From contig NC_088857.1 of NCBI RefSeq assembly GCF_963853765.1, forward strand, positions 15,438,001 through 15,502,000: a stretch of DNA of 64,000 nucleotides, in the 5' to 3' direction. The notes under the pieces were generated by a model that did no database searches, was not told the DNA's origin, and saw only the letters and a program-made list of their open reading frames with translations. This DNA is from Magallana gigas (Eukaryota). The position numbers and the translations under genes are program-made. Shown here piece after piece: positions 42,501 through 62,760 of this stretch (positions within the stretch are counted from its first letter, which is position 1; the number at the start of each line of letters is the position of its first letter).

Positions 42501-45500
42501 CAACACTGGTCAATGAAGACACTTTAACAAACTTTTTCTTCCTCCTCCTCTTCCTCTGGGGGTGGCGGGGGTGGGGTTGGAGTGGGGGGTGGGACCCATT
42601 TGGCTCGTGGTGACAGAAGTGGCAGCAAATAAGAGTCATTGCTGTGTTTATCATTCTAAAATAGGTCGCATGCTATATGTACGTCCACACCAAGAGTCAA
42701 TCTTAAAACTATATATCACTATCTGAGTAATTGCTCTGACAACTTAATATCGATCTCCACGCTACATGTATTTAATATCTAATTTCTAATCTATTGACAA
42801 ATTAAGTCATTTACTAAAATGCAACGCACATTCCTATAATTCAATCATTTCCTGCACGCAATTTACTCATTAATTCAATTAATATATTGATCGAACATCA
42901 GCATGTGTAAATTGATGAAACTTTACATAATGACACCGAGTCATACTAATTGTCATGCAATAAAACTTATTGACAAACCTGACATACATACAATTTTAGT
43001 AAATGTAATTCTAATGAAGAGTCTCTATGGACTTATACCTGGCTCAGGTACAATTAAGGTGCAAGTAAACGAGAACTAAAGAGAACATATTGAATTTTCT
43101 TCCTGCACCAAAGTCCTGCGTTACTAAGAAATTAATCACTACTGTGATAAAATCAATAGTCTTTGGGCCCTGATAAGATATACTCATGAAAAAATAATAA
43201 TCCAGACAAATCTTGCACATTAAAATGATGAGGATTTAACATATCAATAGATATTTTGCAGGCCTGAGGAACAAATTCTGTTTACCATGAAGCATTAAGG
43301 CATTGATCTTAACTGTCTACAGTACTCATCTGCAAAACAGTGCACATGACACAAATATGTGTAGGAAAATGAAATTTACACACTTTTAAAAAAAAGATCT
43401 GCACTGTTCAATTTGATGGATATAATATATATATTCTATTAAATATCTATAAAAATTGGTTATGCACATGCATGTATATTACAATATGCATTCGAATAAA
43501 TATGTTGAATGTTGATTTTATTCACCATGTATGAGCTAGTGTATTCAATTTGCTCTGTCCCTTGTATACATGTTATATGACGTACAGCAGGATAAAAATT
43601 AGTGATGTGTCTACAGGGAGATAACTCTGAAGCAGGAATGTTTCCATAGTGACACCAGATACCCTTAAAAAGCAAACTGGCGGGATTCGGTCACTGCAAT
43701 TGTACATGAATGAACCTAGCAGATGCAAACTATCTAACATGCATAGCAATATTACACTGCTTTTTTGACATTAACTTGAGTCCAACAGATCACTGCATAC
43801 TTCATTGAAATTGTACTGCTAGTGACTCTGCAGAAGACCTTGAATTGTCACCCATAGTATACATATAATATGATAGACTACTTGCAGACACCGGCAATCA
43901 AATGTGTGAATTTCATTCTCACCCGATAACGATTTCTACCAATTTTCTCCTCCTTAACCACTGTTTTATCCTAGTTGTAAATAACACATATATATTTATA
44001 TTAGGAGCTAGTCAAGGAGTTTTCTTCAGCATGCTTGCTCTTTCAGACTGTGACAGATGTTAAAACACTAAGATACGTACTGTACATCCCAAACATCTGA
44101 ACATGAATACATCACAGTAACATGCACTCTTATCGTAAATGTTCCATTCCATTCATGGCTGTGTTCAATCAGTTTCATATGTTGGTCGGAGTATCATAAA
44201 AACTTTATTGTCTTCTTTAAAATTTTGATCTTTCAAAAAATTTCAATTTCACAACCTGCTCACTTAAAACATTTATAGGTTGCAAAATTTTGAGCTAATG
44301 ATGATGATGCTAGAATAAATGAATATATAAATTACAATTCTTTCCTCCCTATTCCCATCACTGATATTGGGCCTATGAAATTCTTAAGTCTCTTACCCTC
44401 ACTCTTCTAACGAGCTCAATCTTGGCAATCTCCTCCAGCTTTCTCCGGATTTCCACTTGCCGGGTGCGTTCCATGTCCAGCGACTTGTGTACAATGGCCT
44501 GAGCTAACATGTCCTTCACATGCTTCTTGTGCTCTTTTCTAGCCATGTTGAGTCTATACTGATTTTCTGATAACAGTTCCCCGCGTTTGTTCACCTAAAA
44601 TTGAATTTTCATATAATTTCATGTTTAACATGACCTGTATAGTAATTTTCTTCATTTGAAACAAAATTTATCTTCCAGTGACTGCAAACAAATGTTTGCC
44701 ATATCAAAAATTTTATTTTATGAAAAAAACATACTTTAATACTAGTATACGAATCAATACAAGTTATTTTTCACTTTTTTTTTTTGGTAGAGTTATACGC
44801 AAATTATCAATCTGGTTAAAAAAAATAATAAAGGGTATTAAAAGATTTGATAATGTCCAAAAGTTTCTCTCTTAATTAAATATACATAGCATGCTTGTGC
44901 AGTAGAACTGAGCTCATACCAGTCCGGCCTTGCGAAGGTGTCTTCTCATGCGGGTGTTGGAGAAGTACCCTGACAGGTTCCTGTCCGTCAGGCTGTTGTA
45001 GGTGGCCAGAGGCCTGTTTCATACAAAAACAAATCAGATCATTAGAAAATTGATAATATAAAACCAATTAATAAAAGCCCATGTATTCAGGCTTCAGAAG
45101 AGGTAGTTCTAACACTTGATCTCCAACTTACCAAGCTTCAGTTTGAACATTGTATCTGATCATGAGGGCAAACAACCATTGTTTTTAAGGTGCATGGTCT
45201 TATACAAAATAAAAACTATTTCATCAGCTTTGCAATAATTTACAGTGAAATATTATGTGAAGCTACATATTAACACAATAACATAAATATTACATGTAAG
45301 GGGCAATTGATAGATCTATGGATGCATGCATGTTTATAAGTACATATACCTTTTTTAAAACTATATGATATACTGACATTCGTCTTTGTCAAGTTATCTA
45401 GATGAATCAATGACTTAATATAGAGAAAATAAGTTGCAAAGCATCATGTTATTATAATTTCAGAATGATTTTCAATTATTTTTAATTCATATATACATGT

Positions 45501-45941
45501 AACATGTATATGCTCTGAATTAAACATCAAAATCATGTAAACTTTCCATGAATATCCATTTAATTCTGAAGTAATTGATTCTTCATAAAACTCAGGAGCA
45601 TTCATTTTCATGATATCCTACAGCCACCTAATCTCCTTAGCAGTGATAAGGTCTCAACACACTAAATCTGCTCCCTGGCTTGTGTGACGATTTATCAAAC
45701 AAATTATTCAAATCAGCGACCCCCTATTCTAAGTAGCATGATACTAGGAGACTCAAAATTACAGGCTAAACATACCCCCGACTGTTTGTTGGTGCAAATA
45801 TTGATTGATTCAAAGTTAAACATAGAAACCAAAACAGACATGCATTGTTTGGTCTATATCAACATTAGGCATTTTATATATGCATGCTTGGGAAACTTAA
45901 AGAGTTTATAGTCATGCGATGTAAAAAACTCTCTCTCTCTC

Positions 45942-45972
<31 letters not shown>

Positions 45973-46629
45973 TCCCGTAAAACATTAAAAACCCCAAGTT
46001 CACCCTATTATAAATTTATTGATTTTAAAAAGGAGAAATATTAATCAAAGCTACTTCATTAACTATATATTTTCTGAGTAAATAATGATAAAAAATTTAA
46101 TGTTCTATGAGACCTGTGTGAAGAGAGATTTAATGCCTGAATACACAAAGACTTGAAATGTAAATAACACTGCATGTTTATTTAATATGCAATTAATCAT
46201 GCATGCAGCAGATATTTAAATAAAATGAATCAGATACGCTATGTACTGCAAACATGATAACTTGCCCTTACATTAATTAAGCTACTGGTATCTGTCTGAA
46301 AAGCTAATATTACCGGTAATATGGGAAATGTGTTCAGAACTGTATCTAAATTAATTAACACCTCAAAAAAGATATTAACTTGCATAACTATTGGCTGGAG
46401 GAAAAATTTAAGTTTTTGTCAATGAAAGATTCATGATGAATTTAGACAGTCGATGATCTCCATCCTGCAGTGTTTATAAATTTAAACTGACCCATTATGA
46501 ATATACTCATCATATATATCTCTGTCATGTAGGTTTCCTTTGAGAAAACTTGCATTAAAAGATCTTTATGTACAATAGAAAACAAATGATCGAACTTTTG
46601 AAAGATATATCGATCAATATATAAAACCA

Positions 46630-46667
<38 letters not shown>

Positions 46668-46764
46668 CGACCCCCCCTGGAAAATGAAAATTTATTAAAT
46701 TTACATAGTAAAATTATCGCAAAAATATGCCTCGGACCCCCCCTGGCAAACACAATTATCCTTC

Positions 46765-46798
<34 letters not shown>

Positions 46799-47417
46799 AT
46801 GCAATGATTAAAAAAAGTACATCATGAAAAAAATCAAGCTTTTTTATTTTTTCCAGACCATACCGGAGGTTAATAAAACCATGCAATTTAATAAGAATAT
46901 GAAGGCAGTAAAATCTATATAATGCATGGGGTTCATTCCCCAGATTTGATGTTTAAAAATTATATTGAAAATTCACCAAGTTATATATTTTTTTATGAAG
47001 GTCACTCTATAGATACCGGGTAATAAGACTATATTTGTCAGTGGTATATTTAATCAATGTGTAAAATATTCATTTCAAAATATTTCTTAATAAAGGTTTA
47101 TTGTTAATGTCTTTAAAAATATTAGCAATATTTGTAACTGATAAAAATTAATTATCTTATCTTCAACTTAATTCGGTCATAATAATTGTAATGGTACATT
47201 CAACATGTTCAAAAAGGTTCACCTAATTTCAATAATTTTGTTTAAATTAGTTTTCATCTCATGAACCCATGAGATTACTCCATTATGATTAAAAGTAGAC
47301 ACCTTATTTTTTCAATACTAAAATTTACAGATATATAATCTACTTGAAGCTATCAATGCATTGATTAACATTACAGAAATCCTGTTCATCAACTTACCCT
47401 TCGTAAACGTGACTCAT
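29179..47417 (-). CDS. ERICH3: Glutamate-rich protein 3 (DUF4590 domain plus long acidic C-terminus), ~1997 aa
   Basis: Exons 47417-47398, 45013-44920, 44594-44397, 41128-40988, 39396-39199, 38873-38733, 37780-37576, 37300-37114, 36977-36847, 36735-36619, 36053-35976, 35343-35275, 33593-29179 (5994 nt, phases match). N-terminus MSHVYEGPLATYNSLTDRNLSGYFSNTRMRRHLRKAGL...LAQAIVHKSLDMER and QQHCGGNTLTVFKENLKPGDTFSFISRRHRGFPFSL...CCEYKH...PCYKC match ERICH3/C1orf173 as recalled. Confidence 0.9.
45930..45971. repeat. (CT)n microsatellite in ERICH3 intron 1
   Basis: Direct reading, with one interruption. Confidence 0.8.
46632..46802. mobile_element. GC-rich MITE (171 bp) with a 3-bp AAT target-site duplication in ERICH3 intron 1
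   Basis: AAT|GCATGCGCGGATC(T)AGA ... TCTGGATCCGCGCATGC|AAT; internal GGACCCCCC(C)TGG repeats. Confidence 0.85.
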
Positions 47418-48410
47418 TTTTACTTTATGCGTTCGTATAAATTGGTTTCATCAATCCATGTCTCGAAATTACTCCATCATTATGGGAAAAACTAGGAACA
47501 ACAGTTTTCAACACAGCTCGTCGCCGGGGTGAACCACGTGATCAAACAAAGTGCGAGATTCCCGAGTGCTCTCTAGACTTTACCATTCACATACCCATAA
47601 ATCCTGTTTCCGAAATTACGGAAGTTGATAAATAATCTAAAATCAGACATCACTCATTCGCTGTATATATATAATCCCGGAAAATATAAAGGTTAAATCG
47701 TGTTTTGAATATATGAATAAGTGTTATTTATGTTAAACGAAAACAATGTAAACAATTAATAAAAAATAATCACTACAGAATAAGGAAGTACATCAAGAAA
47801 AAAAAAGAAAGAAGAAAATTATTTTACTTCGTAAAAGGTTTTTTCTTTTACTCACATCCGCGAGAGTTATTATAGTAGTACAGTCCACTATCTTCGCACC
47901 AGCCTAAGCACCATCCCCATAGGGCATGCGCGAAGGAAAGATGGGTCATGCGACATGCGTACTTCCTTCTTTCTGTTTTGAAACATTCAATTTCAAACGA
48001 AGAGGTATTTTTTTCTTAATTTGTTTTAATGACAATACCATATTATGGTAACAAAATTTGTTTGAGAATATAACCAAATGCAAAACTCATTTACTTTTCT
48101 TTGAAAATAAACCCAATCGGATTTTTCTCAAATATTAAAGGGGAAAAAATTGGCGTCAACCTCGTACGTATTATATAACCCTTTCTATGATCGATTTAGT
48201 CCTACCATATAATGGTAAGCACACCACAGAATTTGCCAAAATTAAATTTTAATCACTCTGGACCTGATATGTGTCTGCAGAGGGATAGGTAATGTCAGGG
48301 ACGTATATACTAACGATTGTGTTATATATGTCTCTGGTAATGTTCACTATTCAATTTCAAGAACTGTCTATTGCAGATTATAATCGGTGTGTCGTAGTAT
48401 TAGGAAAAGT

Positions 48411-51400
48411 ATGGCCAATGCAAGTAAGTTTGTTGGTTTTATCAATTAACCTATATACGAGCATCATTGTAGCATACAAACAATTTTTTGCATTACCAAA
48501 AGCGGTATACATTGCTACATATGATTGGCTGTTCGTTCGCCCTAAAAAGCGCTCGCCCTTGACGCCGTTCGCTCTAGTTTCCGCTACATATGGCACGTCA
48601 AATTCACAAAAATAAGTTAAACATAGTTTTACAGTCGATAAACTAAGCTTAACGATTGTAAACTACATTTTAAGGACAGAATTCTATAGTTAACGATTTA
48701 GTTAACTTTATTTAACACCCTTAATCTATATTTCACATATGTTAACTATAGTTAACACATTCATCTATGTTTCAGAAGTGTAAAACTACCATTAACACGG
48801 AACACGGAACCATTTGCGATTGCAAAACATAATTTATCTGATAAATATAGTTTCACAATTGTGAAACTATGATTAACAAGTCTGAACTATAGTTAAGGAA
48901 TGTAAATTATAGTTTACAGAAGTGAATCTATATTTATCAGCAAAATCTATTGTTAATGTTATTTGCAGACAGATAAACTTAGATTATAATCTGTAAACTA
49001 TAGTTTACATCTGTTAAATGTGGTTTTGCAGATGAAGACTATAGTTAACTGATCGTTAATTATAGTTAACAAATTGTTAACTATAGTTTGTGGTTCGTAA
49101 AGTTATCATTCGATAAAGGTAGTTTATTGACTCAGACTGTGAAACTATGTTTAGCTCATTTTGTGAATTTGGCGTGCCATAGCTACAACCCTTTCCCTAG
49201 ATGTTTTCCTGTCTTTCTTCAACCAAATTGATATTTATTTCCCAGGAAAACACTAGCACCACACCTATTTGATATCTATAACACTAGCACCACACCTATT
49301 TAACCTCTATAACACTAGCACCATACATATTTAACCTCTATAACACTAGCACCATACATATTTAACCTCTATAACACTAGCACCATACATGTTTAACCTC
49401 TATAACACTAGCACCATACATATTTAACCTCTATAACACTAGCACCACATATATCTTAGCTTTATGAAACTAGTACCACACATATTTAATCTTATAACAT
49501 TAGCACCTTACATAGCCTACCTCTTTCTCACTAGCCCACACATATCTTTAAAATATTAGCACCATACATATCTAGCCTTTTTAACACTGGCACCACGCTT
49601 ATCTAACCTCTATACACTAGCGACACACATATCTTAACTCTATAATGTTAGCACCACATATATTTAACCTCTATAAAATTACTACACGCATATTTAACCT
49701 TTATTACACTAGCACCACACATAACTTTACTCTTTAACATAAGCACCACACAAATTTAACTTCTTTAACACTAGCACCATGCATATCTTACATTTGAACA
49801 TTTTCACAACACATATCTTACCTCCTTAACACTAGGGCCAAACAATTATCTCTAAAACACAAGCACCACACATATTTAACCTCTATAACACTAGCATCGC
49901 ACATATTTTTAAACCTCTATAACACTAGCACCATACATATCCAACCTTTGTCACACTAGCACCACACATGTATTATCTCTAGAACATTAGCACCACTCAT
50001 ATTGAACTTCTAAATATGAACATTTATTTAAAGTTGATGTATTTCATCTACGTTAAGTTGAGTTATTTTTTTCATTATTTTTCTTAAAAAGAAATTGCTT
50101 TTTATTCAGTTTGCACTATAATTATTTATATAATGTCCAAACAGCTGTACCAATTTTAATCGTTTTATGAAGAAGAGTCCTTAATTATTCGAGCCCTTGA
50201 AAAAATTTTCATATTGAAAGCTGTTAAAATCTACACGTTGAGTCAAACTTTGTTATCTCGAACTAAATGGGGCTGTCTAAAATCTTCAAGAGATCTGAAT
50301 ATTTGAGATATTGAGGGTTAATTACTTAAAAAATAACTGATTGATACTTACAAATCATTTCAACATATCCTAGTATGTATTCGAGATATCAATGTCTGAG
50401 ATTTCAAAGTTCAACTGTATAAGTTTATGCTTAGATAATGTAATTGTTTCTATATAAATCTAATGAACAGCATTTATTTGCTCGCCTTGAAACAAGATAT
50501 TAAATGATATAATATCTTTTATTTTAATTAGGTTTAACCAAAGTTAATGAGCAGTACTGGGCTTCAGTTCAGGGCAAGGTAATGCCAGCATGTTTGCCAT
50601 AAATAATATTATAGGTTTTATTGCAAATCAATTTTTTTTTCATAGTTAACTATGATTAATAGTTAATAATAGACTAATTAAAAGAAGAAAATTGTATGCA
50701 TTAGGATTATTAACAGAGGGCTAGCGCTACATAGTGATTTATGTAGTGATGACTGTGCGAGACCATTCATGACAAGTTTGAAATTTTGATTTGCTTTTAA
50801 CTTGTACATCATTTCATTATCTAACATGATTTTCAAAGGAAACATATACGGGAATAAATCTGTTGAATGTTTTTATTACTGGGGTCATAGTGTTTCTTAA
50901 ATATTTATATCTTGCATTTTTAAATCAAAATTTCCATAATTATCTTTAGTATTATAACTACTGTATTAGGTTAAAGACTGGATTCAGAAAACAGATGCCA
51001 CTGTATTAGTTTTGTACATACCCCAGCCAACAAAGCGTAATCCTATCCCTACTTTAAAATTTGAAGGTAAGTTTTATTTTGAAAATATAATTTGACACAA
51101 GAGTCAGTTATTCTTTTATTCATTGATGTACCGGTATAAATGTATTTACCGGTAAATGTAAATACATATACATGTACTTAGTGTAAGAAATAAGCATTTT
51201 GATGATTGACAAAATAAACTAAGTTTATTTCATTTTTTATACACATTTTTTGTACATGTTTTATATTTTACTGGAAATACATGTACATTTGCTTAAACAT
51301 GTTTACTTTGTAGGGTCAAGAAAGTTGAAAGCTGTGGTAGAGTCAGAAGAAGTGAGGAGTGCCATCAGTACAGCTTGCAGCGGTCCCCCCCCTCCTGTGA

Positions 51401-52774
51401 AATCCTTCAAAGATGGTGAGTAATACATGTACAGAAAGATATTTTTATTCATTGAATAAGAATCGAGGAAATGTCTTTAAACATTAAAATAAAAACTCTT
51501 TGACATGAAAGAAAATAACAGATATGCTTTTTATTCAGCTAGTTTTCTTTTCTTTTTTTTTTGTATGAAAATTACCATCTGGATGGGTTTTTTTCGCCCC
51601 ATGTAATTATTTTCTTTTTGGGAGTTGATTTTAATCAACTTTCCCATGCAGTTACTCAGACAAACCGAAAGTGAAATAGTGTTTGGACCTTGAAAATGAT
51701 TGATGAATTCGATGTAATGTATGCTAAAGCATTGTTTTTCAAGGAAACTTATTTATAAATACTTTGAAATAAGTCAGATTTTAAATGTTACGAACAATTT
51801 AAATATTTTTTGAAATTTTCACCCTGACTTGAATTCACACATACACAGGTTTTTTTTAAAGAGAGATAATTTGAAACATTGGAATTCACCCAGTCTTAAA
51901 TTTACCAGCTGGCAAAGTTGGGTGAAAATAAAATGAGTGTGCAAATGCTTCCCTGTATACAATATATCCAATATTTTAAATGAGTTTTTATCACTTTCAC
52001 AAAGTTGTTAGTGATTGTATTTTCTTAATTCAGAGATGGTGAACATAACCATACAGCCCTGGACTATGCAAGTGAAGAGGTGTATAATATCTAACTTGGT
52101 TAGGCAGTATAGTAAGTAAAAAAATCCTTAGAGAATCATATTTATTTTTTATTACCCACTCATGCAACTTGTTGTAAGGGGGGTATAGCATCTCATGTAT
52201 ACATGCATGTATTTGGTCTTCTCAATTACATGTAATGCATTTCCCTCCACAATATTTCATTTTGCAAGGGGATGCTCTGCATTGCAATGCACTTGTTTTT
52301 TAATCTATTTCTATATCATTTTTTTTTTTTGTGTTATACTGGTATAAACTTCAAAATCTCTTTATAGTGGAATTGAAGTATGGTAAGAAGAGAGACATTT
52401 GGGGTTACCCTTCCCTTAAACCAGAGTGGTGGCCTAATGGCACTGACTTCATTTCCCCGAATGAAAGACGGACTGTCGGTAAGATTAAGATTAATTTTTA
52501 ATATCTAGTAGTTTAATTTTACTGGTGTGCAATTTATCACCTTTTTTTTTTACCTCATCCCTATTTGTAGGTAAATACAGATTGTACCAGTCCTGTATAT
52601 TTTTTGTTGTCCTTTGTTGTATACTAGTTGTTTGCTTGAGGCGAATGTGTAAGGAATATGAATTTATGTTGAAATCTCACCTATATAACTTGCAACACAT
52701 TTTCCTTGATTTTAGACAAACCGTTGAGTAATATAAGCATGGATCAGATTCTTGATTCATACGTAGAGTGGAAG
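48411..52774 (+). CDS. Divergent NRF1/EWG-type DNA-binding-domain protein (at least 169 aa; last exon not resolved)
   Basis: Exons 48411-48423 (ATG, in-frame stop upstream), 50532-50578, 50970-51066, 51314-51415, 52034-52111, 52368-52478, 52716-52774; phases match. VLVLYIPQPTKRNPIPTLKFEGSRKLKAVV and LKYGKKRDIWGYPSLKPEWWPNGTDF parallel NRF1 as recalled (IVLCISPSKPNPVFKVFGAAPLENVV; LKYSTGRGKPGWGKESCKPIWWPEDIPW). Confidence 0.65.
48589..49181. mobile_element. MITE family A, copy 1 (~590 bp)
   Basis: TATGGCACGTCAAATTCACAAAA ... TTTTGTGAATTTGGCGTGCCATA inverted termini; internal GTTAACTATAGTTAAC-type palindromes. Confidence 0.8.
49249..50005. repeat. 31-bp minisatellite, about 24 copies (unit ATAACACTAGCACCATACATATTTAACCTCT)
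   Basis: Near-perfect 31-nt period at 49280-49450, degenerating towards 50005. Confidence 0.9.
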
Positions 52775-53882
52775 GTATTGGAATGATGATTTTAAGAGTT
52801 AACATGCCCTGAAAATTTAGAATTTCTAGTTTTTAATCATTTGATTGCACGATAATCAGGAGTTAAGAAAAATTTATTGTGGGTGGTTAGGGGTGTTATC
52901 AGTAACACAAAAATTACCTGTTCAAAACAGATACACTGTAAGTACATGTATTTATTCTAAACTCTAAAGATTTATTTTTCAGTATGTTATGTAAATGAAA
53001 TGATTATCTTGCAATCTTTTGAAAAATTCATTACAAGTAGTTTAGTTCATCAAATATTTGTAAGTGAAAGCAATTTATTTGAAATTTATATTCATTGGTA
53101 ATTGCAATGGATATACATGTTTAGTTATTCATGAATAATGCTAGAATTGTCTTGAAATTTCTTTATAAATCAACATCTTAAAATTACATGTAATACATGT
53201 GTTACAATTGGCAAATAAGAGGCAGGCAAGTTTCAACCAGGACTCATATCCAAGGCCTCCAGCATACCATGCCAAGTGCTATAACCACCAATCTAATGCA
53301 ACCTATATATTGGTTGACTTTTGCTGGCCTGTGAACCTGGTGACACATGTATTTTTAATTTTAACATAGGAAAAAATAAATGATCATATGTGACAAAATG
53401 AATTTTGAAGACTTTAAGCCATTTAACTTAAATATTACATGAGCATTGACCTTCTTAGTACTAAAATGCATGTCCTGTTTATGCTGCAATACCCAACTGT
53501 ATGTCTGGCAAGCATGTAATATGAAAATTCTATGGAACGCCCATTATCAATATTGCAGGGTTGTCTCTAAGAATTTAAGTTTTATGTATATCTGTATAAA
53601 AGGATGCAACTGTAACAGTAAACAAAAATCAGTGTGACTGGTATAGGATATGGTTAAGTTAACTTATATGTGTATATATTTTAGAAGCACATATTTTCAT
53701 ATAATACAACAACTACCAGGTATTGCTACTTTTACATGTGTCATTAATGGCATTAAGGTGAATATATGTATTGTACTTCAAGGTGGATAAATCATATCAT
53801 ATTGACTGGAACTCCACCCGAACCCCCCCCCCCCCCCCCCCAAATGATATTTAAATATCAATACATAGCTTATAACATATAC

Positions 53883-56705
53883 CTTTTCTTGTGTACAGGA
53901 ATTTTCTTCACTGTAACGATGATCCTCTACAATCAGACACATTAAAGAACTTAACACATAAATCTATATTCCACAAAGTTTTTGTATGTAAAGTATATGT
54001 AGAAAGCTTAATTGTAGATATAACACAATGACATGGACCAATATGCAGGGTATTCTAAGATTAAATGATGAGTTTTATTATTATACAAAGGTTGAACAAT
54101 GTTATTTTAAGTGCATAGTCAAAAGTGAAAGCTAAAATTCATGCTTGTGCATGGCAATTACCGTGGCTCTTCCATTAATTTGAACTTATCCTTATACAGT
54201 ATTTTGGGGGCATAATCACATTTGCAGAAAAGGCAAGAAGTTTAAAAAAATACAAAAGAATTGAATCATAATTTTTAACACAAAATTTTAATCAGTTTGT
54301 ATGATACACAGTATAATTCAGTTATGAGACTATAATCTTTCAAAAGTTTATCATAATTCATTTTCATTGTCTTTGCATGAATATATATATCAGATACCCA
54401 ATATCAAAAATGAAGTACATTGTAGTCTGTAGATATTAATCAAAATTTCATATTAAGCAATCTTCTTTGGTGTTAAAAGTTTCCTTACAGGTCTTTCATA
54501 GATGCATGTAGCCATGAATGAACCATTACCTGAAACAGTAATCTCCTCAGAATTCTCTTCAACACTGTAAAGATTCTTAAATTTTCTACAAAGCTCTTTA
54601 GCAGCTTCAACATGTATACATCCTGCATACAATTCCTCTACATCTGAAATGGAAAAATACATATAATCATCATTGAGATGGTGACCATCTCAAAGGACCT
54701 AGCTTGCTTATAAACAAAAGATATTAGAATAAAAAGCATTTAAAAAGACTTGCTTTAATTTTAATAGGCATGCATCTGTGCAAGATTGGGCTAATGAGAA
54801 AGAATGTGGTGGCTCAATTTTCGTGGAATAAGTGCATGGGTACCTCTCATCCACGAATCAACATCCTCCAAGAATTAATTAAATTAGGGTAATAAAGTCA
54901 TATTTCCTTTGTAGATTTTAGAGAATACACAAAATTATGTCGATCCCACGAACCTATAAAATTTTAGCAATCCACAAAAATTGGCCCCCACGAAATTTAA
55001 TGATTCCACATTATATCAGGTATGACCTTCACATTTGACCAAAAGTATTGTTCAAAGTCCATATAAACCCATTACCTATAAATTATGTTCATGTAAAATT
55101 AGTGCCAATATGGCTAAGGGGAAAAGTACATGAATATGATCTGAATTTTTTTTTAATTTTACCCAATGTGACCTTGACTCTTGACTTAGAACTCTCTTCA
55201 AGGTTAATACACACCCTTTTACCAAGGGCACTCTGTTGGTGAAGAATGATTCATATTGGACCTAGGGGAATTAAATGATATATAATCCAGAAAAGGATTT
55301 TTCATATAATTCTGCTATAACCTTATAACTTTAAACCATAAAACTTAATTGGTTATAGATGGGTGTGTGTGAAGTATGAGACAAATTTAGCAAAGGAGAG
55401 AAAAAATATGCTTCAAACGAGGACAGACAGAGGGATGGACACAGACGGACTGATTACTAAAGGGTGCCTGCTGAGCGGGGTCCTAATAATTCATGTAGCT
55501 GAAATGACATCATGATTTTGAACATTTCTATTCAACTTTGTATTTCAATTAAAAGATGAAATTTACTTTGAAAATTACTTTGACTATAATATATAATATT
55601 TAAAACATAAATTTTCATGATTATGATTTTTTGAAAATAAAAACATGTAATTATAATTTTAAAATTATGGAGTTAATTGGACTCATACCTTCAGAGGTGC
55701 AAGATCGAACTTTGTTCATGAAATAATGCCGATCTGAGTCACAAGAGCAGGCGTATCCCAACTGTGGCATTTTTTGCACAATTATAGGTTTGACGTTCTA
55801 AAATTGAAATTTAAATACTCCTTAACTTAATTGATAAAAAACATATTCAATCTGCATGCAGCAATCAATATAGAGAACAAATTGGTTGTCATTAGTCTGT
55901 GTAAATATATATAACGAACAGATTGAATTTAATATTTTCATTGAAAATTTAGGAAATACAAAACTAGATTAATTATATAACAATTAATTAAGTTAAGAAA
56001 ACAAGAAAAATAAGTGAATGTAATAAAGTCTTTACACTGAGTGTTTTGTCAGTTGAATTCCAATCCATTAAGGCACACACTTCAATATTTTTATCCAAAA
56101 AAACACATCCCCTGCCTTGAAATATAGAAAATAAATATAATCTGCAGTCCTCTGAGCTTTCCCCACCGATTTCCAAAAAGACATCACCACTCAGAGGCTG
56201 GATATTTTGATGAATTTCAGAACTTGCAGTAGAATTTTCACTTCGGTGATAACTTGATGGCGGCCTGTCAGTAGAAGACGCAGTTTCCTAAAAATGAGAA
56301 TATAAAATCCCCTTTAAATAACTATATAAGGGAAAAACTCATAATTCTTTTATTCAATTTTTAAATTACAAGTCCATATCGTAAATGCATGTACTGTATA
56401 AAGTAAGAAATTTATCTAATGAAATAAAAAGCTAATTACAGCTTTTCTTGATTTAATTTTGGTTGAGGCACTTGAGGGTTTCCAGGGACGTCTCTTGGTT
56501 GGAAGTTTGGAAAAGTCCAATCCACATTCTCCCTGTACAATGAATCTTTTCCTCCAGTTTTCCACTGTAGGTTGAACCCTCTGTTTTAAAGAAAATTAAA
56601 GTATATGATATAAATAACATATAAATACAGATAATTTTTAAATACACTGTACCTCCAGGATTAAAAAAAAATACATACCTTTTTTTTAACATCTTTAGGA
56701 TCCAT
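53883..56705 (-). CDS. SWIM-type zinc-finger-like protein (CxC...CxH), probably an N-terminal fragment of a transposon-associated protein; 3' end unresolved
   Basis: Exons 56705-56679, 56580-56440, 56287-56036, 55797-55689, 54643-54530, 53926-53883; phases match. MDPKDVKKKRVQPTVENWRKRF...GYACSCDSDRHYFMNKVRSCTSEDVEELYAGCIHVEAAKELC... Confidence 0.6.
54805..55012. mobile_element. Degenerate MITE-like repeat (TGTGG..TCA...TGA..CCACA termini)
   Basis: Imperfect inverted ends resembling the 7701-7906 family; TCCACGAA-like internal motifs. Confidence 0.4.
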
Positions 56706-57176
56706 TTTAGATTTTGGAGATTCTACATACGGGATTGAAGACTTGACAAGTCTGCAAATTCTTCTGTGTAAATTAACAGTACGTAAATTTGTGATTTATT
56801 GATCTAAGTGATATATATTATATTATCATGGATAAAATGTAAAATGTAAAATTCATATATTTGTAGATGCCTAATTAAAGGCAAGGGGTTCACATCTAAG
56901 TAAAATCACGAGAAGCATATATCTTGCAGATTTAAAATTATAAATCTCTTTAATATGAACATGCAGTATGTAAATTACACATGTGTGATCTACTATTATA
57001 GCTGATATAAGTAATATAAATCATGGATAAAAATTTAAAAATTACATATTCTAGAATCTGCAAAAAAAAATGACATGGCATTATTTACATCGCATCCAAT
57101 ATATTATTTTCATTCCAAAATGATAATTTAATGCTTAAAATATACACCCTTAATCACTGAATATTGAGATTATATC

Positions 57177-58366
57177 TATTGCATGCCAAATTAACAAAAC
57201 CAAGCTAAACATAGTTTCACATTTGATAAATTTGGTTTATTGACTGGTAACTATAGTGTTATGAGCAGCAAACTAATAGTTAACAATTTGATAACTATAG
57301 TATTCATCTGTAAATTTATATTTAACGATTACAATAGATTTTGCTGATAAATATAGATTCATGCACGTCTGTAAACTATAATTTACATTTGTTAACTATA
57401 GTTAAGAGTTGTTAGTCATAGTTTCACAATCGTGAAACTATATTTATCAGATAAATTATGTTTTGCAATAGCAAATGGTTGTTTTCAGTCTTAATTATAG
57501 TTTTACACTTCTGAAACATAGATACCGGTAATAGCGTTAACTATGGTTAACAGATGTGAATTAATATAGATTAACTGCGTTAAATAAAGTTTCAAAGATG
57601 ATAAACTAGATTTATTGACTGTTAAGTTTAGTTTAAGGATGCTAACTATCGTTAACAATATTTGACTGTTAACTATAGTTTACGAACCGTTAATTATAGT
57701 TAACGATTCATTAACTATTATATAGTTAATGATTCATTAACTATAGTTAACGATTCGCTTACTGTAGTTTTCATCTGCAAAACCATATTTAACGGTTGTA
57801 AACTTAGCTAGTTTCGAATGAAAAATCTAAGTATATCTGTCTGCAAATAACGTTAACGATATATATTTTGCTGATAAATATAGAGATTCACATCTGTAAA
57901 CTATAATTTGCATTTGTTAAGAGTTGTTAATCATAGTTTTACACTTATCAGATAAACCATGTTTTGCAATCACAAATGGCTGTTTCCAGTGTTATACTGT
58001 AAGTTTATATAATATATATATAACCCCTCTGAAACATAGATGATCCCGTTATAACTATATGGTTTACAGATGTGAATTACAAATTTTCGTCATTAATAAT
58101 AGTTTTCTGTCCGTAAACTATAATTTATAACCGTTAAACCTATAGTTTATCGACTGTGAAACTATAATATTAGCTTACTTTTTTTATCTAATAATTTATA
58201 TAACCCCTCTGAAACATAGATGATCCGGTTTACAGATGTGAAATACAGGTTTTGTCGTTAATAATAGTTTTCTGTCCATAAACTATAATAAATTCATAAC
58301 CGTTAAACCTAGTTTATCGACTGTGAAACTATGATTAGCTTATTTTTATTAATTTGGCGTGCCATA
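57177..58366. mobile_element. MITE family A, copy 2 (~1.2 kb, internally duplicated), inverted relative to copy 1
   Basis: Termini TATTGCATGCCAAATT ... AATTTGGCGTGCCATA. Internal 57340-57560 is the reverse complement of 48700-48950. The block TAACCCCTCTGAAACATAGATGATCC occurs at both 58021 and 58201. Confidence 0.75.
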
Positions 58367-58744
58367 TACCCCCCTCCCCCCGAGACGTCAAGATCGAGGG
58401 CTGGTATGATGATTTAATGATATACAGCAACCTCGGGCTAATATAGGATGCGATATAAAATTTGCCATGTAGTAGGCCTAATCTAAAAATATTTCATTCA
58501 TAGTATACGAAATATTTTACCTGTATACCTTAGTTACAAATCATTTTTGCTCTGCTTGCAATATTTCCAGGTGAAACCGACATGTCAAACTGAGATACAC
58601 AGATACACCAATACCTTCCTTTTCAATAAAAAAAAATATACGCTTAATTATAAGTATATATATCAGCGGTGAATTTATGGCATTAATACACAGGATGTCT
58701 AGTAAGGTTAACGTAAAATGAAAGCGGAAAGTAAACAGAATTTG

Positions 58745-58755
58745 GCGCATGCGCA
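58745..58755. promoter_or_regulatory. NRF1 (alpha-PAL)-type palindrome GCGCATGCGCA, about 60 bp upstream of the HACD ATG; a weaker copy is at 47922-47932
   Basis: Matches the established NRF1 consensus TGCGCATGCGCA at 11/12. Confidence 0.55.
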
Positions 58756-58813
58756 ATGAAGATGGTGCTAAGGCTGGTGCTAAGATAGTAGATTACACTA
58801 CTATAATACCTCC

Positions 58814-61800
58814 ATGGCGACGCCAGGGAAAAAAGCTCCGACTCAAAGTCCAGAACCTGAAAATGGTCTATCTGTCGCGTATCTTGTTGCTTACAATGTG
58901 TTGCAGATGATAGGGTAAGATAAATATGAAATATTTGTTTCATATTTGCAATGTGTAGCATTATTGATTTATTCTGTGCTGAGTGTGCTCCTTTGAGATT
59001 TTAGGGGAGGGTTGCTCCCTGGGTAACAGTCAAATCGACACATGTTCATTTAGGCATTTACACATCTATATAGTCAATTCGGTACTGAATGAAATAGAAA
59101 AAAACTGTCAAGTATAATTAATTATTTTAAAAAAAAATGCATTTAAGTTTGCATCTATTGTTGGATGAAAGATGACTTGGAACAGACCAGGATTTAAAAG
59201 TAGGACTGGTCTTAATCTATAGTCAAGTAATATAACAACTCAGCTATCTGACGATGACAATTGAACCAATTAGACTGTCACATTCCTCCCAGCTATTCTC
59301 TTTTGAGAAGTGGACAGGCATAGCCTACATCCATGTCTCTTCGCAAGCCCTCATATTTTAAATTGATTCTGGAAAACGTGTAAATGTGGGAACCAGAGAC
59401 GGTTTAGGCTTCGACCAATATTTCGACTCCAGTTTCCCTATATTTTCGTAAAGACCCATTATTTCTTCATTTTAAACATTAATGCATGCATATATCAAAA
59501 AACAACACTAACCTGCTGTCTGTACTTCTAATTGACAATTCTAGTAGATTAAACTGAACCCAGCTAATGCTTGTTGGGGTCATCTTCTGTGATATGGTTC
59601 ACTTTTGATATCCAATCTGTGTCTTATGCCCAGGTTGGTTTCAGTGTAATATTTATAAAGCTAAGTACATGTATATACTGAATTAACTTGAGAATGCTAT
59701 ACTGTGCATGTACATGTATCTTCATAAATGTAAAAGTGGGATTAATTCTCTCTGAAAGAGTCTTTGTGTTTTCATTGTCATTCATCTTATTTTATTTATT
59801 TCTAGATGGACACTCTTAATGTTTAAATTAGTCTATCACATGGCCTTTGAAAAAACTGTTGCTGGATTGTATGACGAAGTCGCAACTTTCCTGAATATTT
59901 TTCAAACGGCAGCAATTTTAGAAGTAAGTCAAGTTATTATACAGAAATTTCATAAATGTGATGTGCATTAAACAGAATTATGCATTCCATTTTTTTTTTA
60001 ATGTGTGATTTTTATATTTTTTTTATTCACCATTTGTTATTTTTTAACTACAAAGTTTCCATGACAAAATGAAGGTTATTTTAGAGTTCTTTGATTTAAT
60101 ATGCACACTGATTTTGCAAACCACAAATTATTGGTGAGAATTTGTTCAAATATTGAACTGCTGTATCCCTGGTACTTTTTCAACGTACATGTAAGATTGA
60201 ACATAATATAGACAAAGTGTAAAAAGATTTATTGCTGTACTTCACTGAACCTGTGACAGATTCTTCACTGTGCTCTGGGGTTGGTGCGGTCCAGTGTGGT
60301 GCTTACAGCCTTCCAGGTGTTCTCCAGAGTTTTTCTCACCTGGGCAATTACCTACAGTGTTCCATCGGTAAGTCTTATGATTACCTTTATCAATGGCCTA
60401 TTTTACTTTTTTGTACATTACAGTACGTGTATTAGAGATATCAGTTACTGGTGACTTAGTTATTTGTCATATTTACGGTACTTGGGAAGTCTTCATGTGC
60501 TTTTGAAAACTGTCCCTTGCCAAGTCTGTCTATTTCTATCAACTGGATTGATGATTTATTGGGACTGTATTGGGACATTAACTGAAAATATACTTTTGTT
60601 TATCAGGCTGCCAAAGTAAAAAGTATTCTTTGCCACAATTTATGTACTATGATGGATAATGTCAATTCGCATGATGAAATCATAAACAAATATTGACTAA
60701 TTCTATTTACAGTCTCAAAGTTCCTATGGGGTCCTGTTGTTTGTAACTGCTTGGACAATCACGGAAATCATCCGATATTCATTCTACTTTTTTACACTAC
60801 TTGGAGGTGTCCCATATCTTATTGTATGGTGTCGGTAAGTCTAGAAGTTGTATGCTGATATACATGTATGTACAGGTATTACGGATACATGCAGTTGATT
60901 ACTCATTCAGAGTTTGCAGGTGTACAGTCTTATCTGTGTAATAGTTAGATCATATCTTATTTGCATATATTTTATTTAATATAATCTAACTTACTTAGAA
61001 CATAACCCACTTTTTCATTGGCTGATCAAACGTTCTGCACCAATCAGACATTATCTCTCTTTTGTTTATGACTCTCTTAGCTCTCAATCGAAATGTGACT
61101 TCGCCTTCAATTTAGAGAAATCCTTAACGATTAAAAACATCACTTAATAAAATATTTAGCAACTGCTGATTGGATGAAAAAGTGGGTTATGTTCTAAGTT
61201 TGGGTTCAAGGGGGTTTAAATGAACTAAACTGCTCAAGCAGTTCCTTTATTTTCCAATACAGCTATGGAATGGATTGCCTTTAAATGTATATTTACTCAT
61301 GAGAAAATGCCCCAAAAAAAATGTTTCTTTGCAATTCTGCTCCTAACCCCACTCGTACAGTACACATGCATACACTCAGGCCAAAATGAAATTTTGTTTG
61401 TTTGGAATTGCCTCCTGCCTTATTGAATTATCCCCTGCTGATAAAATTTTATGTGGAGATTTTTATTTGTTTTACCAAAAAAATTCCCTCCCTCCCTACT
61501 GGACCTAGAAACCTCTAGGCAGCAATTTCAAACAAACATTTTTTTAAGGTTGGCCTCATGCTTCCATTACCCCCTTTGTGACTATGTTTGTTTTTATGTC
61601 TGATTCTTATCAATAAAACTTGAACATGTAAGCTCAATCAGATTCTATTGAAATGTAAATTTTTTATTTCAGGTACACCTTCTTCATTGTCCTGTATCCC
61701 ATAGGAGTAACAGTAAGTATGAAAAAAGAATAATCCTGAATATATCTATTTTTTTTTTAAATTTTAAATTTTTTATTATGACAATAATACAATAAAAAAA

Positions 61801-62760
61801 AATAGAAAAATAAATTAACAAAGTCTCATAAATAAGAAACATTTGCATGCACCATTTGGTAAAGTGTTGTTTGGCGTATTTTGAGAAGCCCTAACTTTTA
61901 CAGTTGATTCTGACACTGGCATCCAAATCTGCATTATTTGACAAGAAAAGAATTGATGATAATCGATCATTATATGTTTTCGTAAGTCATCCTATGTAAA
62001 GAGCATAGAGCTTGAACAATTTCAATTGTGAGAATGAATCTTAATATACCGAATAGTGTTTGGGTATTATGAAAAAACTGCTCAGAATGAGGGGAGACAG
62101 AACACCATCCTTATTCAAAATGGGTAACTGCAGTACATCTGATCAATTTCTTTATGTCTGAAGGAATCAATTCAGGTATTCCAAAAAAAAATTCTGAAGG
62201 AATAAGGAGCAGATTTGGTTGAGGGAGAGGGTTTGAGGTTAGGTTAGTATTGGTTTAAATATGAATTAAAAGTATTCTTAAAAAAATATACACTACAGCC
62301 AGATGAGTCTGTAAAAGTCAGCACTTTTCCCCAAAAGCTAACATTATATACATAAGCATATGCGAAAAAAGGAGAACAATGAGAAAATAAAATCAACATA
62401 AAAAAAAAAAACATGTTCACACAAGTTGTGTCCAGAAAAATAAAATACAGTCACATATATTGGTCCATGGTGTCTACAGCTTGGTACAACTTTTCTCAAA
62501 CTAAGAACATTAATCACTTTGTATAGATTATAGCACAAAAATAAACAGAAGTATGAAATAGTCGTCTGATCTTGTGTGTTTTAGAGCATTTGATTGAATT
62601 TAACATTTTATTCCAGGGAGAACTTATAACTGTCTATAGCAGTCTAAAAGAAGTCCATGACAAGAAACTGTATTACCTTCAACTGCCAAATGCAGCCAAC
62701 ATTGCATTTAACTACTTCTATTTCCTTGTCTTCTTTATGATCATGTATATTCCAGGTAAG

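What the first reader, a model, noticed from the sequence alone, without database searches (positions are those of the whole stretch)
47868..58808. 10.9-kb inverted-repeat-bounded element carrying an NRF1-like gene and a SWIM-finger gene
Seen: 64-bp ungapped inverted repeats (54/64 identical) at 47868-47931 and 58745-58808. They enclose two convergent multi-exon genes, each apparently transcribed inward from one end. Established: large spliced DNA transposons with SWIM fingers exist (Zisupton/KDZ type), but those have short TIRs and 8-bp duplications. Here the repeats are long and the ends fit only a TA duplication. I know of no TIR element family that encodes an NRF1/EWG-domain protein. Inference: this is an undescribed DNA transposon family, or an internally deleted or domesticated derivative of one.
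Basis: partly seen in the sequence, partly recalled or inferred. Interest (0 to 1): 0.85.

Follow-up and report, generated by a model that had tools for sequence, protein, structure and literature searches.

The report
Deleted Zisupton/KDZ transposon copy in a bivalve
The inverted repeats bound a real, recently mobile DNA transposon of the known Zisupton/KDZ superfamily; this copy has lost its transposase core but keeps the expressed 5' half of an accessory gene with an NRF1-like motif that travels with this transposon lineage.

Summary
The inverted repeat is real: 71 nt, 83% complementary. It marks the exact ends (47864 and 58812) of a mobile element. Two more copies in the same genome share both ends at 97-99.8% identity. 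They lie in unrelated flanks and have perfect 8-bp target duplications. One of them (chromosome C8) carries seven colinear exons of a KDZ (Kyakuja-Dileera-Zisupton) transposase. It is not a new superfamily, and the duplication is 8 bp, not TA.

RNA-seq confirms a seven-exon + strand gene that starts in the left repeat. It gives a 149-codon partial ORF. Only about 45 residues (WG..KPEWWP..SP) resemble NRF1, below Pfam threshold. Its last splice donor joins an exon absent from the reference genome, so fuller copies exist in other individuals.

No SWIM finger was found.

A related 22-kb family in the same genome, and a locus in another species, show the same convergent layout. There the accessory gene also has a PHD finger, and family 2 adds a Ulp1 protease exon. 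A similar terminal repeat occurs in a further species.

The element ends 1 nt before the start codon of the neighbouring HACD gene.

The parts
47855..47863 (.). Left flank copy of the presumed target-site duplication (CATCCGCGA, decayed)
   Evidence: It matches the right flank CATGGCGA in 7 of 9 positions with one gap. Sibling copies have perfect 8-bp duplications.
47864..47934 (+). Left terminal inverted repeat (GAGTTATTATAGTAG...). An NRF-1-site-like GGGCATGCGC lies at 47922-47931.
   Evidence: homology to the C7 and C8 copies begins exactly at 47864/47863; motif position; the repeat is conserved in a second family and in another species.
47864..48002 (+). Exon 1 (non-coding) of the accessory gene, inside and just after the left repeat
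   Evidence: an RNA contig in run X1 joins 47864-48002 to the downstream exons. The 48002>48375 joint is GT..AG. This exon is rare in raw-read run X21, so most transcripts may start at about 48000-48375.
48375..48423 (+). Exon 2, with the start codon at 48411 (MANAS...)
   Evidence: in-frame stop upstream. The 48423>50532 joint is seen in 22 reads of X21 and in contigs of X1 and X3.
48588..49182 (.). Left subterminal repeat zone (20-21-bp units with an AACTATAGTT core); candidate transposase-binding sites
49249..50012 (.). 31-bp satellite, about 25 copies, inside intron 2. It is expanded in the C7 and C8 copies.
50532..50576 (+). Exon 3
   Evidence: Homology with the C7 copy ends at 50564, inside this exon.
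50565..53570 (.). Segment present only in this copy among the reference copies. It holds exons 4-7 of the accessory gene.
   Evidence: no other genomic match apart from a short high-copy repeat..
50968..51064 (+). Exon 4
   Evidence: joints 50576>50968 and 51064>51312, both GT..AG, seen in 4 runs.
51312..51414 (+). Exon 5
51615..51812 (.). High-copy ~200-bp interspersed repeat nested in intron 5. It is not part of the element proper.
   Evidence: 3462 first-look candidates, 78-88% identity; depth in the thousands, with loose ends at both borders.
52033..52111 (+). Exon 6
52368..52478 (+). Exon 7, encoding the NRF1-like WG..KPEWWP..SP motif. It ends at a GT donor whose acceptor exon is missing from the reference.
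   Evidence: The downstream letters AACTCTGAAGG... are absent from the whole genome.
53571..53571 (.). Internal deletion or rearrangement junction
   Evidence: homology to C8 resumes at 53571; contigs of X1 and X3 covering 52449-53580 diverge from the window at 53571 and end there.
53571..58741 (-). Right arm shared with the C8 copy (and, from 55041, with C7). It is the presumed promoter-proximal, non-conserved 5' part of the transposase gene. No transposase core is present.
   Evidence: 98.6-99.8% identity; no tblastn hit of KDZ homologues in the window; its open frames have no family match. The exon structure here is inferred, not shown.
57176..58367 (.). Right subterminal repeat zone (AACTATAGTT units)
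58742..58812 (-). Right terminal inverted repeat (read inward: GAGGTATTATAGTAG...), with a perfect GCGCATGCGC at 58745-58754
58813..58820 (.). Right flank copy of the target duplication (CATGGCGA). It contains the ATG (58814-58816) of the flanking HACD gene.
   Evidence: a downstream exon matches Pfam PTPLA at E 7.5e-11.

Best explanation
The segment 47864-58812 is a non-autonomous, internally deleted copy of a cut-and-paste DNA transposon of the KDZ/Zisupton superfamily.

Inferred complete element: two convergent spliced genes. From the left end runs an accessory gene (NRF1-like KPEWWP motif; in related families it continues into a Ulp1 protease and/or a PHD finger). From the right end runs a multi-exon KDZ transposase. 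Each is probably driven by a promoter at the inner edge of its terminal repeat.

Inferred mechanism: the transposase recognises the conserved ~70-nt terminal repeats and probably the subterminal AACTATAGTT arrays. It excises the element and reinserts it with an 8-bp target duplication.

The window copy: a central deletion removed the 3' ends of both genes. It can move only if a transposase is supplied in trans, for example by the C8 copy, whose catalytic exons are open. Its truncated accessory gene is still transcribed and spliced.

Shown: mobility, ends, 8-bp duplications, KDZ transposase in a sibling copy, absence of that core here, and the spliced transcript.

Inferred: the complete two-gene ancestor, promoter function of the repeats, binding sites, and trans-mobilisation.
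For: 1. Mobility.
- Three copies (C5 window, C7:14278193-14298136, C8:21757919-21776794) share both ends at 97-99.8% identity in unrelated flanks.
- C7 and C8 have perfect 8-bp duplications.
- An RNA-run contig joins element base 47864 to C7:49345008-49345037. The reference has no element at that site, so this looks like a non-reference insertion.

2. Superfamily.
- The C8 copy has seven colinear, stop-free exons on the - strand. They match residues 289-774 of the 775-aa homologue P0007.
- Homologues found with one of these exons (461 at E<=0.001) include full-length proteins with Pfam KDZ above threshold and CxC4.
- One C8 exon alone hits KDZ at E 0.001.
- An 8-bp duplication is the Zisupton signature (PMC12730594). 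Multi-exon transposases are typical of Zisupton (PMC9297572).

3. Deletion.
- No KDZ homologue matches the window.
- Homology to C8 breaks at 53571, where RNA contigs from other samples also diverge.

4. The accessory gene belongs to the element.
- Exons 1-3 lie in the stretch shared with C7, and exons 1-2 in the stretch shared with C8.
- A related 22-kb family in the same genome has 108-bp perfect repeats and termini GAGGTATAATAGTA. It has the same convergent layout: an NRF1-like exon, a Peptidase_C48 exon and a PHD exon facing KDZ exons.
- A locus from another species shows a KDZ gene convergent with a KPEWWP exon and a PHD finger.
- The terminal repeat is recognisably conserved in family 2 and in a third genome.
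Against: - The window copy's own flanks are only an imperfect duplication.
- No reference copy holds both complete genes, so the full element is reconstructed, not observed.
- KDZ was not scored above Pfam's threshold on any single exon of C8. Spliced proteins could not be submitted to the family tools.
- The 5' exons of the transposase gene in the right arm have no RNA or homology support. One candidate open frame carries a stop in C8, so C8 may not be autonomous.
- Family 2's duplication reads as 7 bp, not 8.
- SWIM, part of the canonical Zisupton domain set (PMC11343200), was not found.
Confidence: 0.85

Rival explanations
1. The NRF1-like exons are a host gene fragment captured only by this copy (transduplication, or filler DNA at the deletion), not a gene of the transposon family.
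For: Exons 4-7 (50565-53570) occur in no other reference copy. The motif resembles a host transcription factor, and the genome has genuine NRF1 genes on C4.
Against: The start-codon exon and exon 3 lie in sequence shared with the other copies. The same motif-bearing gene sits convergent to a KDZ transposase in a second family and in another species. No parent locus for exons 4-7 exists in the genome.
Confidence: 0.08
2. The window copy is no longer just a transposon remnant. It has been co-opted: its right repeat serves as the promoter or 5' UTR of HACD, and/or the truncated NRF1-like gene is a domesticated host gene.
For: The element ends 1 nt before the HACD start codon. A perfect NRF-1-type palindrome lies 59-68 nt upstream of that ATG. 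The accessory gene is expressed in many RNA runs from several studies.
Against: Copies are 97-99.8% identical, and an apparently non-reference insertion exists. This means very recent activity, with little time for domestication. Most spliced transcripts continue into an exon absent from this copy, so they come from other copies. HACD transcription start was not examined.
Confidence: 0.1
3. It belongs to another superfamily with 8-bp duplications and long repeats (Mutator-like, hAT, P), or to a wholly new superfamily.
For: Long repeats plus an 8-bp duplication also fit Mutator-like elements and hAT. No family domain is detectable in the window copy itself.
Against: The only transposase found in a sibling copy is KDZ-type. 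No MULE, hAT or THAP family appeared in any Pfam scan of its exons.
Confidence: 0.03
4. The repeats are promoter-associated palindromes of a fixed host locus, not transposon ends.
For: Both arms contain NRF-1-like motifs typical of housekeeping promoters, and they sit between two host genes.
Against: The same ends bound copies on two other chromosomes, with target duplications.
Confidence: 0.01

Closest known systems
Zisupton (KDZ superfamily) DNA transposons, first described in platyfish (Bohne et al. 2012; cited from PMC12730594, PMC9297572, PMC12062965)
   Same: Terminal inverted repeats, 8-bp target duplication, a large multi-exon transposase with a KDZ core preceded by a cysteine-rich region, low copy number and recent activity.
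   Different: No SWIM finger was detected. A separate convergent accessory gene carries an NRF1-like KPEWWP motif. From memory only (the paper is not held): the fish element's name refers to a zinc finger and a SUMO (Ulp1) protease. If so, the Ulp1 exon seen in the sister family here is not new, but its place in a separate gene would be.
Cryptococcus KDZ1/KDZ2/KDZ3 and KDZx1 (PMC11343200)
   Same: KDZ1 is 10,944 bp, with an 8-bp duplication, long (236-bp) repeats and several genes besides the transposase. It has been shown to transpose.
   Different: These are fungal and of the Dileera clade (KDZ1-3). Their extra genes are of unknown function and show no reported NRF1-like, Ulp1 or PHD content.
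Fungal KDZ elements carrying TET/JBP dioxygenase genes (PMC12730594)
   Same: KDZ transposons that carry a second, chromatin- or DNA-directed gene as stable cargo.
   Different: The cargo here is a putative DNA-binding, protease and PHD protein, not a dioxygenase. The host is an animal.
NRF1/EWG transcription factors (Pfam PF10491)
   Same: They share the WG..(K/R)P.WWP motif. The best language-model neighbour is a molluscan Nrf1_DNA-bind cluster, at score 0.85, which is a lead only.
   Different: Only about 45 of 213 domain positions align, at 13 bits against a 23.5-bit cut-off. Pfam PF11001 (YDR124W-like) scores equally. It is not a member by test.

Membership tests
KDZ/Zisupton DNA transposons | KDZ (RNase H-like DDE) transposase, Pfam PF18758 | tested here: inconclusive
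   Window copy: absent. Sibling copy C8: seven colinear exons match KDZ proteins at E down to 8e-28. One exon hits PF18758 at E 0.001, 19.2 bits, below the 26.6-bit cut-off. Its homologues score 28.8-35 bits, above the cut-off. So the feature is met for the family through C8 and not met for this copy.
KDZ/Zisupton DNA transposons | 8-bp target-site duplication | tested here: met
   C7 has CTCTGAAT and C8 has CATAGTTA, both perfect. The window copy is imperfect (CATCCGCGA versus CATGGCGA). The 8-bp figure for Zisupton comes from PMC12730594.
KDZ/Zisupton DNA transposons | Terminal inverted repeats | tested here: met
   71 nt at 83%. The sister family has 108 nt at 100%. The repeat is conserved across families.
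KDZ/Zisupton DNA transposons | CxC-type cysteine cluster N-terminal of the KDZ core | tested here: inconclusive
   C8 exons align to the region of homologue P0122 that Pfam calls CxC4. The exons alone gave no Pfam hit.
KDZ/Zisupton DNA transposons | SWIM zinc finger (canonical Zisupton domain set, PMC11343200) | tested here: not met
   No PF04434 hit at any copy. No CxC..CxH pattern in any frame of the window element or of C8. A motif split by an intron would be missed.
KDZ/Zisupton DNA transposons | Multi-exon transposase gene | tested here: met
   At least 7 exons over 4.3 kb in C8. The description of Zisupton as multi-exonic comes from PMC9297572.
NRF1/EWG DNA-binding domain family | Match to Pfam PF10491 above the gathering score | tested here: not met
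   13-13.3 bits, E 0.07-0.08, covering profile positions 144-170 of 213 only. A genome-wide PF10491 search found no hit in the window. tblastn to the genome's own NRF1 gene gives E 0.002 over 32 aa.
Mutator-like (MULE) and hAT elements | MULE or hAT transposase domain | tested here: not met
   Pfam scans of the C8 and window open frames returned only KDZ. The homologues carry KDZ and CxC4 only.

The most novel reading that the evidence does not exclude
A clade of animal Zisupton-like transposons, found in at least two bivalve genomes and one further invertebrate genome, is a conserved two-gene system. A KDZ transposase faces a convergent accessory gene. That gene combines an NRF1/YDR124W-like KPEWWP DNA-binding motif with a PHD finger and, in at least one family, a Ulp1/SENP protease. 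Both genes would be driven by housekeeping-type promoter motifs (an NRF-1 palindrome or CCAAT boxes) built into conserved 70-110-nt terminal repeats. The accessory protein would then be a transposon-encoded chromatin or SUMO-directed factor needed for transposition or for evading silencing. I found no description of this class of transposon helper in the literature I could search.
Probability: 0.45. Interest if true: 0.65.

Novelty: new member of a known kind. Interest (0 to 1): 0.45.

Why it matters
- It gives a fully delimited, very young Zisupton/KDZ family in a bivalve. The ends, the 8-bp duplication, one copy with an open catalytic core and a likely non-reference insertion are all defined. 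Few animal KDZ elements are characterised to this level.
- It shows that a gene an annotator would call 'NRF1-like transcription factor' is transposon cargo. The same gene type recurs with KDZ transposases in other genomes, which affects gene-family counts in molluscs.
- The copy sits 1 nt from the start codon of an essential lipid-synthesis gene (HACD). This is a natural test of whether a transposon end can replace a promoter.

Tried and rejected
- Pfam SWIM and Nrf1 searches of the whole genome gave no hit in the window. A regular-expression scan for SWIM found nothing.
- The exon that follows the donor at 52478 was sought in the genome, allowing 2 mismatches, and as 12-mers in all fetched loci. 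It was absent.
- The search for homologous proteins with the 99-aa open frame of the right arm gave one unnamed 68-aa hit, so there is no gene model for the transposase 5' part.
- Contigs encoding homologues P0007, P0001 and P0027 were too short to show neighbours.
- I asked whether the NRF-1 palindrome in the repeats is the binding site of the element's own NRF1-like protein. The sister family has the protein motif but no such palindrome anywhere in 22 kb. It has CCAAT-type ATTGG boxes instead. I therefore read the motif as a promoter element for host factors and dropped the self-binding idea to low odds.
- Literature searches for NRF1/EWG domains in transposons, and for a Zisupton-Ulp1 link, found nothing. 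The original Zisupton paper is not held.
- Spliced proteins could not be given to Pfam, structure or homology tools by reference, so no fold was predicted for the accessory protein.
- A masked N run in locus L016 was left alone.


Full report
**Observation**

The repeat finder and a blastn of the two ends confirm an inverted repeat at 47864-47934 and 58742-58812, 71 nt and 83% complementary. There is also a second layer of inverted similarity 0.7-1.3 kb inside each end (48588-49182 versus 57176-58367). It is made of 20-21-bp units around the palindrome AACTATAGTT. All 7 perfect copies of that 10-mer in the 64-kb window lie in these two zones, against 0.18 expected. The only two matches to the NRF-1-type palindrome GCGCATGCGC (one mismatch allowed) in the window sit at the inner edge of the two arms.

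**It is mobile**

The window is G000:C5:15438001-15502000. Searching the genome with each end found two more copies:
- C7:14278193-14298136, 19.9 kb.
- C8:21757919-21776794, 18.9 kb.

Their homology to the window starts exactly at 47864/47863 and ends at 58812-58815. Identity is 97-99.8%, and the flanks are unrelated. With the element defined as GAGTTATTATAG...CTATAATACCTC, C7 is flanked by CTCTGAAT on both sides and C8 by CATAGTTA. Both are perfect 8-bp duplications. The window copy has CATCCGCGA on the left and CATGGCGA on the right, an imperfect pair.

A diverged (83%) right-end remnant lies at C4:27430229.

A contig in RNA run X1 joins element base 47864 to 30 nt that occur once in the genome, at C7:49345008-49345037. 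The reference has no element there. The simplest reading is an insertion present in that animal and absent from the reference.

**What the copies contain**

Only the ends are shared: 47864 to about 50564 on the left, and 53571 (C8) or 55041 (C7) to 58812 on the right.
- C7's interior is a tandem array of a reverse-transcriptase element that I judged Penelope-like by eye from its open frames, nested in the transposon.
- C8's interior has, on the - strand, a chain of open frames.

A phmmer search with one 213-aa C8 frame against 1.84 billion proteins gave 461 hits at E<=0.001. The long hits carry Pfam KDZ above threshold (28.8-35 bits against a 26.6-bit cut-off) and CxC4.

Laid back on C8, the 775-aa homologue P0007 aligns colinearly in seven stop-free exons, residues 289-774. 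Conserved blocks include LLFDGTS, VIYDNACNL and NTQ.VEQ.N, which I take to be the catalytic D, D and E (inference). One exon alone hits KDZ at E 0.001.

None of these proteins matches the window anywhere in 45001-62000. The window copy lacks the whole conserved transposase. Its homology to C8 breaks at 53571, immediately beside the first of C8's large conserved exons.

**The left gene**

RNA runs from several studies hold about half of the unique stretch 50565-53570. Laying two poly(A) raw-read runs and two contig runs on 47800-53799 gave six GT..AG joints on the + strand. The reads have the polarity expected of a + strand RNA in a stranded library.

| Exon | Coordinates |
|---|---|
| 1 | 47864-48002 |
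| 2 | 48375-48423 |
| 3 | 50532-50576 |
| 4 | 50968-51064 |
| 5 | 51312-51414 |
| 6 | 52033-52111 |
| 7 | 52368-52478 |

Exon 1 is rare in the raw reads, so many transcripts may start at about 48000-48375.

The open frame starts at 48411 (MANAS...) after an in-frame stop and runs 149 codons to the end of exon 7.

Only exon 7 resembles anything known. The stretch ...WGYPSLKPEWWPNGTDFISPN... scores as follows:
- Pfam Nrf1_DNA-bind: E 0.07-0.08, 13 bits, profile positions 144-170 of 213.
- Pfam PF11001 (YDR124W-like): E 0.04.
- tblastn to the genome's own NRF1 gene: E 0.002.
- A language-model search put a molluscan Nrf1 cluster first, at score 0.85, which is a lead only.

'NRF1-like motif' is fair. 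'NRF1-family member' fails the test.

After exon 7 the contigs of two runs, labelled as two different organisms, continue with AACTCTGAAGGTAGTGGGAGGAAGGATTT. That sequence is absent from the whole reference with 2 mismatches allowed. None of its 12-mers occurs in any fetched copy. Contigs covering 52449-53580 diverge from the window at 53571. So fuller copies, with more exons, exist in other animals. The window copy is cut at 53571.

**The accessory gene belongs to the transposon**

Exons 1-3 lie in sequence shared with C7, and exons 1-2 in sequence shared with C8.

A protein search with exon 7 found weak paralogues. Three of them lie in a 17-22-kb repeat (99.5-99.98% identical copies at C2:18.09M, C2:59.30M and C4:6.84M). 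The C4 copy of this family ('family 2') has these features:
- It is 22,073 bp, bounded by 108-bp perfect inverted repeats whose termini read GAGGTATAATAGTAAC. The window element's termini read GAGTTATTATAGTAG and GAGGTATTATAGTAG.
- It has a 7-bp (CCTACTG) duplication.
- On the + strand it has the KPEWWP exon (Nrf1_DNA-bind E 0.016), a Peptidase_C48/Ulp1 exon (34 bits, above cut-off) and a PHD finger (24.9 bits, above cut-off).
- On the - strand near the right end it has KDZ exons.

This is the same convergent layout as inferred for the window family.

Two loci from other species add to this:
- In assembly GCA_903813345.2 (from memory an annelid; unverified), a KDZ gene is followed by a convergent KPEWWP exon and a PHD finger at 30.4 bits.
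- In assembly GCA_902652985.1 (from memory a scallop; unverified), the sequence GAGGTATAATAGTAGTGTCG...GATCTAAGAACCTCG lies 3.5 kb upstream of a KDZ gene. It aligns without gaps to the repeats of both families here.

That note led me to look for the protease.

**Right arm and SWIM**

The right arm (53571-58741) holds open frames shared with C8, but none has a family match or useful homologue. One of them has a stop in C8. I had no reads call left for this arm, so its exon structure is not shown. No SWIM finger was found by Pfam or by pattern.

**Promoter motifs**

The window family has the NRF-1 palindrome at the inner edge of each repeat. Family 2 has no such motif anywhere, but has ATTGG (CCAAT) boxes at the same place. 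I read these as host-factor promoter elements driving inward transcription. Binding sites for the element's own NRF1-like protein seem less likely.

**Context**

The right flank is HACD (PTPLA, E 7.5e-11). Its ATG is at 58814-58816, 1 nt after the element, and lies inside the presumed target duplication. How HACD is transcribed now was not tested.

**Comparison with known elements**

- An 8-bp duplication and terminal repeats define Zisupton (PMC12730594).
- Its transposases are multi-exonic and long (PMC9297572).
- KDZ elements of about 11 kb with 236-bp repeats, an 8-bp duplication and extra genes transpose in Cryptococcus (PMC11343200).
- Fungal KDZ elements carry TET/JBP cargo genes (PMC12730594).

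The window element is therefore a new family of a known superfamily. Its possibly new aspect is the conserved accessory gene.

**Verdict**

I rate interest as moderate.

Noticed in passing
window 58813-58920 and 59756-60451: The HACD (PTPLA-family) gene starts 1 nt after the transposon's right end. Its original upstream region is now 10.9 kb away, on the other side of the element.
   Followed up: partly
G000:C7:49345008-49345037 (L022 1501-1530): An RNA-run contig joins this unique site to the transposon's first base. The reference is empty here, so this is a likely insertion polymorphism.
   Followed up: partly
G000:C4:6822051-6862050 (element = reverse-complement coordinates 8479-30551); also C2:59.30M and C2:18.09M: A 22-kb sister transposon family with 108-bp perfect terminal repeats and three copies 99.5-99.98% identical. 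It encodes an NRF1-like + Ulp1 + PHD gene convergent with KDZ exons.
   Followed up: partly
C7 copy, G000:C7:14282946-14294363 (approx.): Tandem, nearly identical copies of a reverse-transcriptase element (671-aa open frames; judged Penelope-like by eye, no family scan run) are nested inside the C7 copy of the transposon.
   Followed up: no
window 51615-51812: A ~200-bp interspersed repeat with thousands of genomic copies and very high RNA depth. Many reads carry a 34-nt insertion at 51690 relative to this copy.
   Followed up: no
window 49249-50012; C8 copy; G000:C4:27423900-27429050: A 31-bp satellite (AACACTAGCACCACACATATTTAACCTCTAT) inside the element's intron 2. It is expanded to several kb in the C8 copy and lies next to the diverged C4 remnant.
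   Followed up: no
G000:C7:5673685-5676515 (L019): A tandem triplet of short open frames with the same KPEWWP-like motif, next to a reverse-transcriptase element.
   Followed up: no
G000:C8:35609870, C7:11987799, C3:8771513, C6:28035673: Four loci encode a more distant (36-40% identical) KDZ transposase exon, each with one stop. This is another KDZ family in the genome.
   Followed up: no
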